63,856 nt of DNA, taken from contig CALSCP010000837.1 in assembly GCA_943704425.1 (NCBI GenBank), forward strand, positions 1 to 63,856, read 5' to 3'. Of this stretch, positions 6,094 to 9,190 are shown one piece after another (positions within the stretch are counted from its first letter, which is position 1; each line of letters opens with the position of its first letter). Origin of the DNA: Ministeria vibrans ATCC 50519 (taxonomy: Eukaryota > Protista > Filasterea). The notes beneath the pieces are model-generated. The model saw nothing but the letters and a program-made list of their open reading frames with translations, searched no databases and was not told where the DNA came from. Both the position numbers and the translations under genes were made by a program.

Positions 6094-6147
6094 GAATAAA
6101 AAATAATAATACGTCTAATAACCTAATAATAATACTACTACTACTAC

Positions 6148-6199
<52 letters not shown>

Positions 6200-6390
6200 T
6201 ATTATTTTCAATTTTCAATTTTATCTAATGTGCACTGCTATTGGATTACTGAATAACTCTATTGCACTGGTTTCGTAAACTATTTTGAATTTTTGATAGT
6301 CATCTCTTGCTGAATTTTTTACGATAACAGGATTAATGTATTTCCGTATTATCAACACGTATAAACAGAGCACACAAACAAAAAAGAAAA

Positions 6391-9084
6391 CTACTTCTTG
6401 GCGGCGGCGGCAGCAGCAGCAGCAAGCTCTGAGTGTTTGGGGCCCGAGAGGCCCTTGTCGAAGCGGATGAGAAGGTCACAGACACGGTCGATGTCCTCGA
6501 AGGTGAGACCGTGGTGAGCACCGAGAAGGAAGGAACGCGCCATAATGGCGTCAGAGGCCTCGAATTCCTGGAGGTAGTTGCGGTAGGCGGGGTGGCGCGT
6601 GATGTTGCCAGCGAAGCAGACACGCACCTGGACGTCGCGCTCCTCGAGGTAACGCAACAGGTCCATGCGTTCCGTGGTGGGCTTACCCTCGGCAATGGTA
6701 AGGGGGAAGGCAAGCCAGTCGTACTTCTCAAAGTCGATGGGTAGGATGTAGCTGGCGTTTGCCTTGGTCAGGTTGGTGACGTAGCGGCGAATGTTGTCCT
6801 TGCGCAGCTTGGTAAAGTGCGGCAGCTTCTTCATTTGCGAGACACCAAAGGCGGCGTTCATCTCGGAGCACTTGAAGTTGTAGCCGTGGACGGCGTAGAG
6901 GAACTTGAAGTCGTAGGGGATGCCGTCGACCTCGTGGCCAAAGCGCTCGGTGACATCTTCGGAGTTGTTGCCGATGCGACCCCAGTCACGGTACATGAGA
7001 GCCTTGGAGTGGAAAGCAGGGTCCTTGAACATGACGACGCCACCGCAACCGCCGGCCGTGATAATGTGGCTTGCGTAGAACGAAATGGAGGCAACATCCG
7101 TGTCAGGTGTGCACGTCATGGTGTCGCACGAGTCCTCGAAGAGCCAGATGTCCTTGCGGGGCAGACGAGCGCGCAGACCCGCCCAGTCAATCTTGGAACC
7201 GATGAGGTTGGGAATAAAGATGCAGCTAGTCTTGTCGGTGATCTTCTCGAGGACCTGCTCGATTGAGGGAACGTAGCGACCAATTTCGACGTCACAAAAG
7301 ACGGGCTTGACACCAATCTGCTCCATGGGGGCAATGGAGGTGGAGAAGGTGCAGGCGGGAGTGACGACCTCGGAGCCCTTGGGCAGGTTGAGCACGGACA
7401 GACCGACCATGTTGGCGGAGGAACCCGAGTTAACCATGATGCCACAGGCCTTGCCAAAGTAGGTCGAGACACGCTGCTCGAACTCGGCCGTGATGGGGCC
7501 GGGTGCGAGCCAGCCGGCGCGCAGGCACTGCTCGACGGCGCGGATTTCCTCCTCGCCGTACGCCTCAAACGTGTGCGGCGCGTACCAGACCTTCTTCTGG
7601 GCGACGTTGCCGGTTGCCTGGGTCGTTGCGTAGTAGGACATGACGTGCGGGTTCCAGTCGGCGAGGGCATCGGCGACCGAGTGCGGCTTGAAGTCCGGCA
7701 GGGTCGCCTGCAGCTTGGTGAGGGTGAGGCCGGCGGCGAGGGGACGCGGCGCCTTCTGGCCGAGGTTCTTGGTCTCGACGGCGCTCAGCTTGGCGGTGTC
7801 GAGCTTGAGCAGAGTAGCGACCTCGGTGGCGAATGCGTGGCGGCTCATGAGTGCCGGGCCAACGACGTTGAAGATGCCTGCGGCACCCTTGTTGACGAGG
7901 GCACGGGTAGCGGCGGCAATGTCTTTGTTGTAGGTGGGCGTGGCAATCTGGTCGCTGGGCACGGGGAAAGAGGTGACACCGGCGCTCGAGAGTTGCTTGA
8001 TAAGCGTGTTGACAAAGTTCTTCTGCTGCGTCTCGGGTCCGTAGACACCAGTGGTGCGAACAATAATGGCGTCGGGCGCGGCGAGGGTGACAAGACGCTC
8101 ACCCTCAAGCTTGCTCTTGCCGTACACACTGGCCGGGTTAGGCGTGGCCGTCTCATCGTAGGGACCGGCGGAGCCGTCAAAGACGTAGTCGGACGAGTAG
8201 TAAACGACCTTGGCGCCAATAGCGGCGGCGGCAGTCGCAATGTTGGCGGGACCCGTCGCGTTGATGGCGTACGCCTTGGTGAGGTCCGACTCGCAGCCGT
8301 CGACCCAGGTGAAAGCACCGCAAATGGCAACCACGTCGGGCATAGACATGGTGATCATTTGCTTGGCGTAGTCGGTTGACTCGGCCGCCTGCTCAAGGTT
8401 GCAATGGACGAGCGACGCGTCAGTCTGCACGCCACAGTAGGTACCGACGGTGACGTAGTCGCTAAAGGACTGCAAGAGGGCCGCGCCGACCTGGCCCGAG
8501 GCACCAACGACGAGAAGACGCTTGCGCGCGGCGGTCGTGGTGGCGACCGCGCTCGGCACAAGAGGCTTGGCGGCCTGGTCCTTGTCCGAGATGATGGGAG
8601 TGACACCCTCGGGGATGGGCCATTTGATGTTGAGCGTAGCATCGTTCCAGGCCACGTTGCGGTCGGCCGCCGGGTCGTAGGTACCCTCCTGGAAGTAGGT
8701 GATGGTGCAGCCGTCCTCGCCGGAGATGAAACCGTGACCACAGCCGGCGGGCACGTACAGTTGCTTCATGTTCTCGGCGGTGAGATGCACACAGCTCCAC
8801 TGCAAGTAGCTGGGCGAACCCTCGCGCAAATCCACGACAAAGTCGTAGAGCGAGCCGGCAAGACAGCTGACGGTCTTGCCGTACGCCGAGCAGTGGATAC
8901 CACGCAGCACGTTTGCCTTGGACTGCGAAACGGAGATCTGCTCAAACTTTTTGGGCTGCTCGTTTGCGGCGATCACGCTGTTGCTGTTGTACGCCTCGTA
9001 GAAGAAGCCCCGGTCGTCGGAGAACTTCTTGCCGGTGTACACCTTGGCACCTTCGACAGGGAGCTTGTGGATGCTGACGCTCAT
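6391..9084 (-). CDS. Trifunctional NDP-sugar enzyme: RmlC-like epimerase + RmlD-like 4-reductase + DegT/RfbH-like PLP enzyme (His-type, C3-dehydratase-like)
   Basis: Single intronless ORF from ATG 9084 (MSVSIHK). RmlC motifs: FSDDRGFFYE, VLRGIH, LYDFVVDLREGSPSY, LYVPAGCGHGF. RmlD motifs: GASGQVG, SSDYVFDG, VYGKSKLEGE, DQIATPT. DegT-fold motifs: VNSGSSAN, EDSCD, SFYASHIITAGG, RDWGR, GYNFK. Confidence 0.9.
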   Translation of the reverse strand: MSVSIHKLPVEGAKVYTGKKFSDDRGFFYEAYNSNSVIAANEQPKKFEQISVSQSKANVLRGIHCSAYGKTVSCLAGSLYDFVVDLREGSPSYLQWSCVHLTAENMKQLYVPAGCGHGFISGEDGCTITYFQEGTYDPAADRNVAWNDATLNIKWPIPEGVTPIISDKDQAAKPLVPSAVATTTAARKRLLVVGASGQVGAALLQSFSDYVTVGTYCGVQTDASLVHCNLEQAAESTDYAKQMITMSMPDVVAICGAFTWVDGCESDLTKAYAINATGPANIATAAAAIGAKVVYYSSDYVFDGSAGPYDETATPNPASVYGKSKLEGERLVTLAAPDAIIVRTTGVYGPETQQKNFVNTLIKQLSSAGVTSFPVPSDQIATPTYNKDIAAATRALVNKGAAGIFNVVGPALMSRHAFATEVATLLKLDTAKLSAVETKNLGQKAPRPLAAGLTLTKLQATLPDFKPHSVADALADWNPHVMSYYATTQATGNVAQKKVWYAPHTFEAYGEEEIRAVEQCLRAGWLAPGPITAEFEQRVSTYFGKACGIMVNSGSSANMVGLSVLNLPKGSEVVTPACTFSTSIAPMEQIGVKPVFCDVEIGRYVPSIEQVLEKITDKTSCIFIPNLIGSKIDWAGLRARLPRKDIWLFEDSCDTMTCTPDTDVASISFYASHIITAGGCGGVVMFKDPAFHSKALMYRDWGRIGNNSEDVTERFGHEVDGIPYDFKFLYAVHGYNFKCSEMNAAFGVSQMKKLPHFTKLRKDNIRRYVTNLTKANASYILPIDFEKYDWLAFPLTIAEGKPTTERMDLLRYLEERDVQVRVCFAGNITRHPAYRNYLQEFEASDAIMARSFLLGAHHGLTFEDIDRVCDLLIRFDKGLSGPKHSELAAAAAAAAKK

Positions 9085-9157
9085 TCTGAACGAAATGTGG
9101 GAGGGATGAGAGAAAAAAAAAAAAGAAAAAAAGGGAAAAAAGAGGATGTGAGATGTT

Positions 9158-9190
9158 AATGAGTCAGGTGTGTCCACCACAGCTTTATAT
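9158..9190 (-). promoter_or_regulatory. Putative TATA box + initiator for the NDP-sugar fusion gene
   Basis: Minus-strand TATAAA at about 9184-9189 lies about 29 nt upstream of an Inr-like TCATT at 9158-9162, which is about 75 nt above the ATG. Confidence 0.45.

What the first reader, a model, noticed from the sequence alone, without database searches (positions are those of the whole stretch)
6391..9084. Triple-fusion enzyme that could synthesise a 3,6-dideoxy-L-hexose (ascarylose/colitose-type) nucleotide sugar
Seen in sequence: RmlC-like, RmlD-like and DegT-fold domains in one intronless ORF among intron-rich neighbours. The Schiff-base Lys position of the DegT fold is His (SFYASH, codon 7066-7068), and the segment after RDWGR has no Cys cluster. 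Established: Lys-to-His marks C3-deoxygenating dehydratases (E1/RfbH/DdhC, ColD); E1 needs a 2Fe-2S cluster whereas ColD does not; ascarylose synthesis after the 4,6-dehydratase step needs C3 dehydration, C5 epimerisation and C4 reduction. Inference: one polypeptide covers all three steps, so this eukaryote may make a rare dideoxysugar for surface glycans or signalling glycolipids. The gene may have been horizontally acquired from a bacterium or giant virus.
Basis: partly seen in the sequence, partly recalled or inferred. Interest (0 to 1): 0.8.

Follow-up and report, generated by a model that had tools for sequence, protein, structure and literature searches.

The report
Three-domain deoxysugar enzyme in a protist
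A non-photosynthetic protist carries an expressed gene that fuses three bacterial-type sugar-modifying enzymes, and its third domain belongs to an unstudied, iron-sulfur-free branch of sugar 3-dehydratases also common in giant viruses and phages, so the cell may make a rare 3,6-dideoxy sugar of the ascarylose type, though this is predicted and not shown.

Summary
The minus-strand ORF 6391-9084 (897 aa) holds three domains: RmlC-like epimerase (Pfam E 5e-49), RmlD-like reductase (1e-62) and DegT-fold (1e-66).

- **Active site.** The DegT domain has His673 (codon 7066-7068) in the column of E1 His220 and of the aminotransferase Lys. It lacks the E1 [2Fe-2S] cysteines.
- **Placement.** The domain is neither E1 nor ColD. 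It lies in a third well-supported clade of His-type enzymes with no invariant Cys and mostly the Ser-His pair seen in ColD.
- **Gene neighbourhoods.** Members of this clade sit next to glucose-type 4,6-dehydratases (68 of 80 viral loci), RmlC/RmlD genes and YerE-like ThDP enzymes, whose known acceptor is a 4-keto-3,6-dideoxyhexose.
- **Fusions.** The clade is fused to RmlC and/or RmlD in several other architectures.
- **This genome.** It holds an intron-rich glucose 4,6-dehydratase, no other RmlC or DegT gene, and no LHC genes.
- **Expression.** A transcript-like contig is colinear with the CDS and starts at a splice acceptor.
- **Relatives.** The closest are Pyramimonadales algae, alveolates, giant-virus bins and phages.

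Best reading: a trifunctional enzyme turning NDP-4-keto-6-deoxyglucose into an ascarylose-type sugar by ColD-like chemistry. The product is untested and rhamnose remains possible. I saw no earlier scan note on this gene.

The parts
6391..9084 (-). Complete CDS (897 codons plus the stop at 6391-6393) of the RmlC-RmlD-3-dehydratase-like fusion
   Evidence: ORF and domains. An identical protein is encoded on a transcript-like contig. In that contig an in-frame TAA lies two codons upstream of the ATG.
8560..9063 (-). RmlC-like cupin domain (residues 8-175), a sugar 3,5/5-epimerase
   Evidence: PF00908 E 5.2e-49. It matches 1dzr RmlC at 122 bits, and His64, Lys70, Tyr130 and Asp169 align with the catalytic His63, Lys73, Tyr133 and Asp170. 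These residues are invariant in 6 triple-fusion proteins.
7699..8520 (-). RmlD-like SDR domain (residues 189-462), an NAD(P)H-dependent 4-ketoreductase
   Evidence: PF04321 E 1.3e-62 and TIGR01214 216.5 bits. The motifs GASGQVG (194-200), SSDYVFDG and Y321-x3-K325 are present.
6472..7557 (-). DegT-fold PLP/PMP domain (residues 510-871), a His-type sugar 3-dehydratase-like domain of a Cys-free clade
   Evidence: PF01041 E 1.1e-66. PDB sequence matches: E1 200 bits, ColD 122 bits. AlphaFold model pLDDT 82.5, with E1 then ColD as top folds. Clade membership.
7066..7068 (-). Codon of His673, which replaces the Schiff-base Lys; it is preceded by Ser672
   Evidence: Alignment with E1 His220. The column is His in 229 of 230 rows and Lys in the aminotransferase row. 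A Ser precedes the His in 167 of 180 Cys-free rows, against Ala in 45 of 49 Cys-cluster rows.
6937..6990 (-). Loop RDWGRIGNNSEDVTERFG (residues 699-716), which takes the place of the E1 C-x-C-x7-C [2Fe-2S] motif
   Evidence: No Cys is invariant in 14 diverse clade members.
9086..9150 (-). Polypyrimidine tract and AG (9087-9086), a likely 3' splice acceptor one base before the ATG
   Evidence: Sequence. The transcript contig matches the genome only from 9085 onward, and 5 non-genomic bases precede that point.
6313..6390 (-). 3' UTR as far as the transcript-like contig reaches
   Evidence: blastn of L001 against the window. Four of the seven differences lie here, and the three in the CDS are synonymous.

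Best explanation
The gene encodes a cytosolic, expressed, trifunctional nucleotide-sugar enzyme.

**Proposed pathway**
1. An intron-rich glucose-type 4,6-dehydratase elsewhere in the genome (contig C372) supplies NDP-4-keto-6-deoxy-D-glucose, most likely the UDP or dTDP form.
2. The C-terminal DegT-fold domain forms a PMP-sugar Schiff base. His673 abstracts the C4' proton and the 3-OH is expelled.
3. The domain has no iron-sulfur ligands. The enamine intermediate is therefore presumably released and hydrolysed as in ColD, and PMP is regenerated from an amino acid such as glutamate.
4. The RmlC-like domain inverts C5.
5. The RmlD-like domain reduces C4 with NAD(P)H. The product would be an NDP-3,6-dideoxy-L-arabino-hexose, that is 3-deoxy-L-rhamnose or ascarylose type.

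Some NDP-L-rhamnose may form in parallel whenever the epimerase acts first.

**Shown:** domain identities, conserved catalytic residues, absence of the Fe-S motif, clade placement, synteny and fusion patterns, presence of the upstream dehydratase, and expression.

**Inferred:** the 3-dehydration itself, the ColD-like turnover, the nucleotide carrier, the order of steps and the product.
For: **Domains and residues**
- Three domains at E 1e-49 to 1e-67.
- RmlC His/Lys/Tyr/Asp and RmlD GxxGxxG and YxxxK are conserved and invariant among orthologues.
- His673 sits at the E1 His220 / aminotransferase Lys column.
- D and Y at the positions of E1's D194 and Y217 are kept (EDSCD, SFY). These are residues that, from my memory of the E1 work, mark the dehydratase state.

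**No iron-sulfur site**
- No Fe-S cysteines, and no invariant Cys in the clade.
- The Ser-His pair of ColD is found in 93% of Cys-free rows, against Ala-His in 92% of Cys-cluster rows.
- An E3-like reductase gene is adjacent in 4 of 20 canonical E1 loci and in 0 of 172 loci of the non-canonical kind (160 of this clade plus 12 mixed ColD-like and Cys-free), Fisher p 9e-5.

**Phylogeny**
- The clade is separate from ColD-like (99) and canonical E1 (96), with its own support of 98.

**Gene context**
- A glucose-type 4,6-dehydratase lies next to the gene in 68 of 80 viral loci.
- RmlC-RmlD-DegT occur in the fusion's order in a Flavobacteriales MAG (L078), and as RmlC-DegT-RmlD in Halorhabdus (L072).
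- A YerE-like ThDP enzyme is within the flanks in 53 of 80 viral loci, and also in 9 of 20 canonical E1 loci. YerE's acceptor is CDP-4-keto-3,6-dideoxyglucose (PMC9306805).
- RmlC-DegT, RmlD-DegT and SDR-DegT fusions also exist.

**This genome**
- It has a 4,6-dehydratase at C372.
- It has no other RmlC or DegT gene.

**Expression and constraint**
- A transcript-like contig matches the CDS, and all three CDS differences are synonymous.
Against: - No member of this clade has been characterised, so the 3-dehydratase assignment rests on the Lys-to-His signature and on gene context.
- The score is below NCBIfam's RfbH equivalog cut-off (256.5 against 423).
- The conserved Glu of the GEGG motif, present in E1 and ColD, is replaced (GGCGG). 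The consequence is unknown.
- The active-site loop is poorly modelled (pLDDT below 50 at domain residues 192-201).
- The RmlC-RmlD module's nearest non-orthologous relative (P0004) is fused to a 4,6-dehydratase and looks like a plain rhamnose synthase. A related RmlCD fusion from Prymnesium makes rhamnose (PMC6556577). Rhamnose could therefore be the main product here.
- E3 adjacency is seen in only 20% of canonical loci, so its absence is weak evidence.
- I found no report of 3,6-dideoxyhexoses in these eukaryotes.
Confidence: 0.55

Rival explanations
1. The protein is mainly an NDP-L-rhamnose synthase (RmlC plus RmlD). The DegT-fold domain does something other than C3 deoxygenation on the shared 4-keto intermediate. 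One example is a slow 4-transamination to a 4-amino-4,6-dideoxy sugar. The protein would then be a branch-point enzyme with two products.
For: - A related RmlCD fusion from Prymnesium makes TDP- and UDP-rhamnose (PMC6556577).
- P0004 joins a 4,6-dehydratase to the closest RmlCD relative.
- This gene holds the only RmlC domain in the genome, so any RmlC-route rhamnose must come from it.
- ColD and SpnQ can transaminate as side reactions (PMC8987622).
Against: - Every characterised Lys-to-His enzyme of this fold is a 3-dehydratase (PMC8987622).
- Synteny with YerE-like enzymes, whose acceptor is a 3,6-dideoxy-4-keto sugar, is shared with canonical E1 loci.
- No acyl- or methyltransferase typical of amino-sugar routes is fused or adjacent here.
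Confidence: 0.2
2. The domain is a true 3-dehydratase, but the end product is not ascarylose. The reductase might give another C4 configuration. The substrate might be GDP-4-keto-6-deoxymannose, giving a colitose-type sugar. Or the 3-deoxy-4-keto intermediate might be passed to other enzymes.
For: - The genome also has a GMD-like gene at C2402.
- In most viral loci the gene pairs with a 4,6-dehydratase and other SDRs or ThDP enzymes rather than with RmlC/RmlD. The clade therefore serves several end products.
Against: - RmlC- and RmlD-type partners are glucose-series enzymes.
- The dehydratases next to clade members are 40-48% identical to a glucose-type domain.
- The domain is outside the ColD-like clade.
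Confidence: 0.15
3. The DegT-fold domain is catalytically dead and serves as a structural or regulatory appendage of an RmlCD enzyme.
For: The GEGG Glu is lost and the active-site loop is poorly modelled.
Against: - Conservation is very strong: 61-74% identity across distant eukaryotes.
- His673, the NSGSSAN motif and the EDSCD motif are invariant.
- The domain also exists as a stand-alone protein in dinoflagellates, viruses and bacteria.
Confidence: 0.05
4. The ORF is bacterial or viral contamination, or a recent unexpressed insertion in the assembly.
For: The domains are of bacterial type, the CDS is uninterrupted, and the closest non-eukaryotic relatives are viral.
Against: - The gene lies inside a 64-kb contig between eukaryotic genes.
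- Its GC3 of 0.80 equals that of host ORFs.
- It has a splice acceptor and a transcript-like contig.
- It belongs to a eukaryote-only clade with support 98.
Confidence: 0.02

Closest known systems
E1 (AscC/DdhC/RfbH), CDP-6-deoxy-L-threo-D-glycero-4-hexulose 3-dehydrase of Yersinia and Salmonella
   Same: It is the best PDB match by sequence (200 bits, about 31-35% identity) and by fold. It shares His at the Lys position, the SFY and EDxCD motifs, and a 4-keto-6-deoxyglucose-type pathway context.
   Different: The window domain lacks the C-x-C-x7-C iron-sulfur motif, has Ser-His instead of Ala-His-His, and has lost the GEGG Glu. It scores below the RfbH cut-off, lies in a separate clade, and no E3-like partner gene is seen nearby.
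ColD, GDP-4-keto-6-deoxy-D-mannose 3-dehydratase
   Same: It is a His-type enzyme without an iron-sulfur cluster and has the Ser-His pair. It is the likely mechanistic model, with glutamate-driven PMP regeneration and hydrolytic release (PMC8987622).
   Different: The match is only 122 bits and 23% identity. ColD-like sequences form their own clade (99). ColD works in the GDP-mannose series and partners with the SDR ColC, not with RmlC/RmlD.
RmlC/D fusion of Prymnesium parvum and other haptophytes and Gymnodiniaceae (Wagstaff et al. 2019, PMC6556577)
   Same: It has the same N-terminal RmlC-RmlD order and bacterial-type modules in a eukaryote. RmlCD fusion proteins in my search are 41-46% identical to this part.
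   Different: It is two domains only and makes NDP-L-rhamnose. That paper does not contain the words DegT, aminotransferase or dideoxy.
Bacterial ascarylose pathway (AscB, AscC/E1, AscD/E3, AscE 5-epimerase, AscF 4-reductase)
   Same: The proposed sequence of chemical steps after the 4,6-dehydratase is the same: C3 deoxygenation, C5 epimerisation, C4 reduction.
   Different: The bacterial route uses separate proteins, a CDP carrier and an Fe-S/E3 electron chain. Here there is one polypeptide, no Fe-S site and probably a UDP or dTDP carrier. Homology of AscE and AscF to these domains was not tested here.
C. elegans PERM-1, a multidomain sugar-modifying protein proposed for ascarylose synthesis (PMC3514041)
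   Same: It is a eukaryotic multidomain protein with dehydratase, epimerase and dehydrorhamnose-reductase-like parts, proposed to make an ascarylose nucleotide.
   Different: That paper describes no DegT-fold domain and predicts two transmembrane segments. No sequence comparison could be made here.
Plant RHM and the P0004-type 4,6-dehydratase-RmlC-RmlD fusion
   Same: These are also three-activity fusions in deoxysugar synthesis. The RmlCD part of P0004 is 51-52% identical to the window's.
   Different: Their third module is the 4,6-dehydratase, so they should end at rhamnose. Here the third module is the 3-dehydratase-like domain.

Membership tests
E1 / RfbH / DdhC 3-dehydrase | His in place of the PLP-binding Lys | tested here: met
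   His673 aligns with E1 His220. The column is His in 229 of 230 rows and Lys in the aminotransferase row.
E1 / RfbH / DdhC 3-dehydrase | [2Fe-2S] ligands C-x57-C-x1-C-x7-C | tested here: not met
   The loop reads RDWGRIGNNSEDVTERFG with no Cys. No Cys is invariant in 14 clade members. All 20 canonical genomic E1 genes have 3-4 Cys there.
E1 / RfbH / DdhC 3-dehydrase | Score above the NCBIfam equivalog cut-off (NF011936, 423 bits) | tested here: not met
   The window scores 256.5 bits. Genomic scores are bimodal: 533-761 bits for the 44 over the cut-off and 270-376 bits for the non-canonical ones.
E1 / RfbH / DdhC 3-dehydrase | Placement inside the canonical E1 clade | tested here: not met
   The canonical clade (96) and the window's clade (98) are separate.
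E1 / RfbH / DdhC 3-dehydrase | Dedicated E3 (Fer2 plus FNR) reductase partner | tested here: inconclusive
   An E3-like ORF is adjacent in 4 of 20 canonical loci and in 0 of 172 non-canonical loci. The window's own genome was not searched for one.
ColD 3-dehydratase | His-type active site with a preceding Ser and no Fe-S cluster | tested here: met
   Ser672-His673 is present and no Cys motif is found. The ColD S187/H188 pair is seen in the PDB alignments and entry titles.
ColD 3-dehydratase | Placement inside the ColD-like clade | tested here: not met
   The ColD-like clade of 7 rows (99) excludes the window. The sequence match is 122 bits against 200 for E1.
ColD 3-dehydratase | Glutamate-dependent PMP regeneration with release of ammonia | not testable with these tools
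   This needs an enzyme assay.
RmlC dTDP-4-dehydrorhamnose 3,5-epimerase | Cupin fold with the catalytic His, Lys, Tyr and Asp | tested here: met
   PF00908 scores 166.6 bits. His64, Lys70, Tyr130 and Asp169 align with the catalytic residues of 1dzr and are invariant in orthologues. TIGR01221 scores 146.1, just under its cut-off of 155.75.
RmlD dTDP-4-dehydrorhamnose reductase | Extended SDR with GxxGxxG, Ser/Thr and YxxxK | tested here: met
   PF04321 scores 212 bits. GASGQVG, SSDYVFDG and Y321/K325 are present. TIGR01214 scores 216.5, just under its cut-off of 224.05.
Eukaryotic RmlC-RmlD fusion (Prymnesium type) | RmlC N-terminal to RmlD in one eukaryotic polypeptide | tested here: met
   The domain order is shown. 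RmlCD fusions are 41-46% identical. The added third domain is the difference.

The most novel reading that the evidence does not exclude
There may be a third, iron-sulfur-free mechanistic class of sugar 3-dehydratase, distinct from E1 and from ColD. It would be abundant in giant viruses, tailed phages, candidate-phyla bacteria and microbial eukaryotes. In one eukaryotic lineage set (Pyramimonadales algae, this heterotrophic protist and unnamed relatives) it has been welded to RmlC and RmlD. The result would be a single-polypeptide NDP-ascarylose-type synthase. 3,6-dideoxy-L-hexoses, so far known in eukaryotes only from nematodes, would then be made by protists and algae. The gene would have moved between eukaryotes and their large DNA viruses.
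Probability: 0.4. Interest if true: 0.75.

Novelty: new variant of a known kind. Interest (0 to 1): 0.62.

Why it matters
- **Enzymology.** Sugar C3-deoxygenation is known from only three studied enzymes: E1, ColD and SpnQ (PMC8987622). A large separate clade that keeps the His but never had, or has lost, the iron-sulfur site would broaden that field.
- **Viral annotation.** It would give a name to hundreds of viral genes now labelled only by similarity as ascC, ddhC or rfbH (PMC10653327).
- **Eukaryotic glycobiology.** Outside nematodes I know of no 3,6-dideoxyhexose in eukaryotes. The fusion is a ready-made one-gene test object for finding such sugars in protists and prasinophyte algae.
- **Gene exchange.** It would also serve to study gene traffic between large DNA viruses and their hosts.
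- **If the product is only rhamnose.** The finding then reduces to an unusual architecture of a known pathway.

Tried and rejected
- **Organism identity.** Exact look-ups of three other proteins of this genome found nothing. I established only that no LHC gene is detectable.
- **E3-partner test.** Only 4 of 20 canonical E1 loci carry an adjacent E3-like gene, so its absence near Cys-free genes is weak support.
- **Context look-ups.** The look-ups for P0231, P0172, P0161 and P0036 returned short single-gene contigs with little or no context.
- **5' exon.** A donor site for the transcript's 5 non-genomic bases (TAAAC followed by GT) was not found upstream on the gene's strand. Whether this reflects a distant 5' exon, trans-splicing or a contig-end artefact stays open.
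- **ColD alignment.** The phmmer alignment to E. coli ColD mutants puts the window's His one position after residue 188. This is a one-residue loop indel, because genomic ColD-like sequences with an SFYYSHH-type spacing align His to His.
- **Literature.** I found nothing on this triple fusion, on eukaryotic E1-like enzymes or on 3,6-dideoxy sugars in giant viruses.
- **C1832.** Its 330-aa SDR was checked as a possible NRS/ER-type rhamnose enzyme. It matched only GalE-like structures weakly, which is inconclusive.
- **C372 gene.** The multi-exon 4,6-dehydratase was searched exon by exon. I built no joined protein model.
- **Trees.** All trees were 'quick' searches with SH-aLRT support only. I ran no AU tests, so donor and direction of transfer are not claimed.
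Full report

Yes. The window has a minus-strand ORF at 6391..9180, and the ATG model at 9084 gives 897 residues.

Pfam finds three domains:
- dTDP_sugar_isom (RmlC) at residues 8-175, E 5.2e-49
- RmlD_sub_bind at 189-462, E 1.3e-62
- DegT_DnrJ_EryC1 at 510-871, E 1.1e-66

NCBIfam's best model for the C-terminal part is RfbH. The score is 256.5 bits, well under the equivalog cut-off of 423.

The H220K mutant entry (3bb8) shows Lys at the same place. In a MAFFT alignment of 230 domains the column is His in 229 rows and Lys in the single genuine aminotransferase.

E1 reads RDWGRDCYCAPGCDNTC after the conserved RDWGR. The window reads RDWGRIGNNSEDVTERFG, without cysteine.

**2. The gene as a eukaryotic gene**

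Evidence that the gene is expressed:
- A 2778-nt contig from a public run encodes exactly this protein.
- It is colinear with the window from 9085 to 6313 at 99.75% identity. It begins one base before the ATG and ends 78 bases after the stop, so it looks like an mRNA.
- Its first five bases are not in the genome at that place. The genome has a long polypyrimidine tract and an AG at 9087-9086 directly before A-ATG, which is a normal 3' splice acceptor.
- The coding sequence is therefore intron-free, but the mRNA is probably spliced at its 5' end.
- In the contig an in-frame TAA lies two codons upstream of the ATG. The N-terminus is thus fixed, with no room for a targeting peptide.
- The three differences inside the CDS are all synonymous.

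Evidence that it is a host gene and not contamination:
- GC3 is 0.80, like other host ORFs in the window at 0.77-0.83.
- First-stage notes list the neighbours as NACHT-TPR, Roco/NLR-like and EGF-repeat genes (unchecked by me).

Two points about the genome:
- Other genes are split into many exons, for example the 4,6-dehydratase on C372 and the GMD-like gene on C2402.
- No LHC family member is detectable in its 29.7 Mb. The organism is therefore not a green alga, although its closest homologues are.

**3. Catalytic equipment of the three domains**

- *RmlC.* Against Salmonella RmlC (1dzr, 122 bits) the residues His64, Lys70, Tyr130 and Asp169 align with the catalytic His63, Lys73, Tyr133 and Asp170 (residue roles are from established RmlC literature).
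- *RmlD.* The domain has GASGQVG, SSDYVFDG and Y321-x3-K325.
- *DegT fold.* The domain keeps NSGSSAN, EDSCD and SFY as well as the His.
- *Conservation.* Apart from K325, which the divergent P0158 has lost, all of these are invariant in an alignment with five other triple-fusion proteins.
- *Structure.* An AlphaFold model of the DegT domain (pLDDT 82.5) matches E1 first and then ColD. The active-site loop itself is poorly predicted.

**4. What the DegT-fold domain is**

It is neither an E1 nor a ColD in the strict sense.

A library-wide search gave 327 representatives at E below 1e-30. In the alignment, rows fall into two types:
- canonical E1 type, with SFYPAHH, GEGG and 3-4 Cys after RDWGR
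- a large type with SFYASH[IVM]ITAGGxGG and no Cys

A tree of 93 domains separates the two types with support 99.

I then collected reference sequences from 401 Pseudomonadota genomes. RfbH-model scores were bimodal: 44 genomes scored over the cut-off (533-761 bits), and a dozen further genes scored 270-376 bits. The low group holds ColD-like genes (SFYYSHH, MEGG) and Cys-free genes.

A three-family tree gives ColD-like 99, canonical E1 96 and the Cys-free clade 98, with the window inside the last. The order among the three is unresolved.

Other features of the Cys-free clade:
- No Cys is invariant in 14 diverse members.
- The residue before the His is Ser in 167 of 180 Cys-free rows and Ala in 45 of 49 Cys-cluster rows. 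Many rows are close relatives, so these counts are not independent.
- ColD has the same Ser-His pair (Ser187-His188), as the PDB alignments and entry titles show.
- According to a 2022 review, only E1, ColD and SpnQ have been characterised (PMC8987622). No solved structure belongs to this clade.

**5. Evidence that the clade makes 3-deoxy-4-keto sugars**

This evidence is contextual.

*Synteny with 4,6-dehydratases and RmlC/RmlD.*
- In 80 viral loci, a gene 40-48% identical to a glucose-type 4,6-dehydratase lies beside the DegT-like gene in 68, mostly immediately downstream.
- In 80 prokaryotic loci, an RmlC gene is near in 15.
- One Flavobacteriales MAG (L078) has RmlC-RmlD-DegT in the same order as the fusion.
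- Halorhabdus salina (L072) has RmlC-DegT-RmlD.

*Synteny with YerE-like enzymes.* A ThDP enzyme of the acetolactate-synthase/YerE type lies within the flanks in:
- 53 of 80 viral loci
- 13 of 80 prokaryotic loci
- 9 of 20 canonical E1 loci

YerE attaches a two-carbon branch to CDP-4-keto-3,6-dideoxy-D-glucose (PMC9306805). Both clades therefore keep company with an enzyme that needs exactly the product of C3 deoxygenation.

*Closest MAG contigs.* In the Chlamydiae MAG contig (L038) the gene is flanked by a 4,6-dehydratase-like SDR, an RmlD-like SDR, a glycosyltransferase and methyltransferases. In the Flavobacteriaceae MAG contig (L037) a 4,6-dehydratase-like SDR follows it.

*Independent fusions.* RmlC-DegT occurs in Amoebophrya. 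RmlD-DegT, SDR-DegT and DegT-SDR also occur.

*No E3 partner.* An E3-like ferredoxin-FNR gene is adjacent in 4 of 20 canonical loci and in none of 172 non-canonical loci (160 of this clade plus 12 mixed ColD-like and Cys-free), p 9e-5. The test has little power.

**6. The pathway in this genome**

- The only RmlC domain and the only real DegT domain in the assembly are in this gene.
- A second RmlD-like gene lies on C2553. It may be a MAT2B-like gene, which I did not test.
- Contig C372 carries a multi-exon gene whose exons are 36-63% identical to the 4,6-dehydratase domain of P0004. Their best structural relatives by sequence are glucose 4,6-dehydratases (6vlo, 8du1, 2hun). I searched it exon by exon and built no joined model.
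- The substrate NDP-4-keto-6-deoxyglucose can therefore be made.
- By established stereochemistry, C3 deoxygenation followed by C5 epimerisation and RmlD-type reduction gives 3-deoxy-L-rhamnose. That is 3,6-dideoxy-L-arabino-hexose, or ascarylose.
- A colitose-type product would need the GDP-mannose series and ColC-type partners, so I rate it lower.

**7. Relatives and origin**

Triple-fusion orthologues:
- Pyramimonas sp. CCMP2087, 61%
- Cymbomonas tetramitiformis, 62% (KAK3271157, filed as a hypothetical protein)
- several unnamed environmental sequences

Other eukaryotic members:
- stand-alone copies at 59-65% in dinoflagellates (Polarella, Prorocentrum, Effrenium, Noctiluca) and in Chromera
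- an RmlC-DegT fusion at 60% in Amoebophrya

All eukaryotic rows form one clade (98), and the six close triple-fusion rows sit within it. One divergent triple-fusion protein, P0158 (38% identical), falls outside, next to the viral clades.

The next relatives, at 55-60%, are on more than 595 IMG/VR contigs, including five giant-virus bins. One of these bins carries XRN and ankyrin genes beside it. Two 'bacterial' MAG contigs nest among the viral rows. The protein atlas also lists Nucleocytoviricota and Uroviricota clusters first. Deeper branches are Patescibacteria, Proteobacteria and archaea.

The branching among the eukaryotic and viral groups is a polytomy. Exchange between eukaryotes and large viruses is likely, but donor and direction are open.

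The RmlC-RmlD part resembles the known RmlCD fusions (41-46%). Its closest non-orthologue is P0004 (51-52%), a 4,6-dehydratase-RmlC-RmlD fusion.

**8. Known or new?**

- RmlCD fusions in microalgae are published (PMC6556577). That paper does not contain the words DegT, aminotransferase or dideoxy.
- A review of giant-virus glycans does not mention 3-dehydratases.
- Viral metagenome papers list ascC, ddhC and rfbH only as annotation labels.
- C. elegans PERM-1 is a multidomain protein proposed for ascarylose synthesis, but it is described without a DegT-fold part.
- I found no description of this architecture or of the Cys-free clade. The orthologues sit in databases without a function.

**9. 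Verdict**

| Claim | Probability |
|---|---|
| Trifunctional enzyme with an ascarylose-type 3,6-dideoxy-L-hexose product (best explanation as a whole) | 0.55 |
| The broader novel reading: a third dehydratase class plus 3,6-dideoxy sugars in protists | about 0.4 |

It is a new variant of a known kind of enzyme system. Interest is moderate to high, because one recombinant protein and one GC-MS run would settle it.

Noticed in passing
IMG/VR loci L126-L205 (for example L162:7998-12561, L126:8001-13752): A recurrent viral gene cluster holds the Cys-free E1-like gene, a glucose-type 4,6-dehydratase (68 of 80 loci) and a YerE/acetolactate-synthase-like ThDP enzyme (53 of 80 loci). In three related metagenome contexts a short-chain reductase, NeuB and DHQ-synthase-like genes follow. 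This suggests that phages and giant viruses make branched 3,6-dideoxy sugars of the yersiniose type.
   Followed up: partly
G000:C328, locus L010:3036-5975 (minus strand): A second uninterrupted fusion ORF in the same genome encodes 980 aa. It has an N-terminal NAD-dependent epimerase/dehydratase SDR domain and a GT2 glycosyltransferase domain. A caspase-NB-ARC gene lies next to it.
   Followed up: partly
Protein P0004 (851 aa, Logan): A different triple fusion, 4,6-dehydratase-RmlC-RmlD, was found. It is built from bacterial-type modules and would make NDP-rhamnose from NDP-glucose in one polypeptide. Its RmlCD part is the closest non-orthologous relative of the window's.
   Followed up: partly
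window 9085-9150 (minus strand) and L001:1-5: The transcript-like contig carries 5 bases (TAAAC) that the genome lacks at this place, just upstream of a polypyrimidine-AG acceptor. No TAAAC-GT donor lies upstream on this strand within the window. This could be a distant 5' exon, spliced-leader trans-splicing or a contig-end artefact.
   Followed up: partly
Proteins P0011-P0015, P0210, P0222, P0238: These are RmlD-E1 two-domain fusions of about 690-760 aa from metagenomes. They keep the full Cys cluster and HH motif, so the reductase has also been fused to canonical, iron-sulfur E1 enzymes.
   Followed up: no
L238 (G070:C5) and L239 (G311:C31): Two proteobacterial genomes carry a canonical Cys-cluster E1 gene and a ColD-like gene within about 5-9 kb of each other in one polysaccharide locus.
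   Followed up: no
window 6120-6200: A long (ATT)n / (AGT)n-type trinucleotide microsatellite lies about 200 bases downstream of the gene's 3' end.
   Followed up: no
G000, whole assembly: No chlorophyll a/b-binding (PF00504) match was found in 29.7 Mb. This argues that the organism is not photosynthetic, although the gene's nearest orthologues are from prasinophyte green algae.
   Followed up: partly
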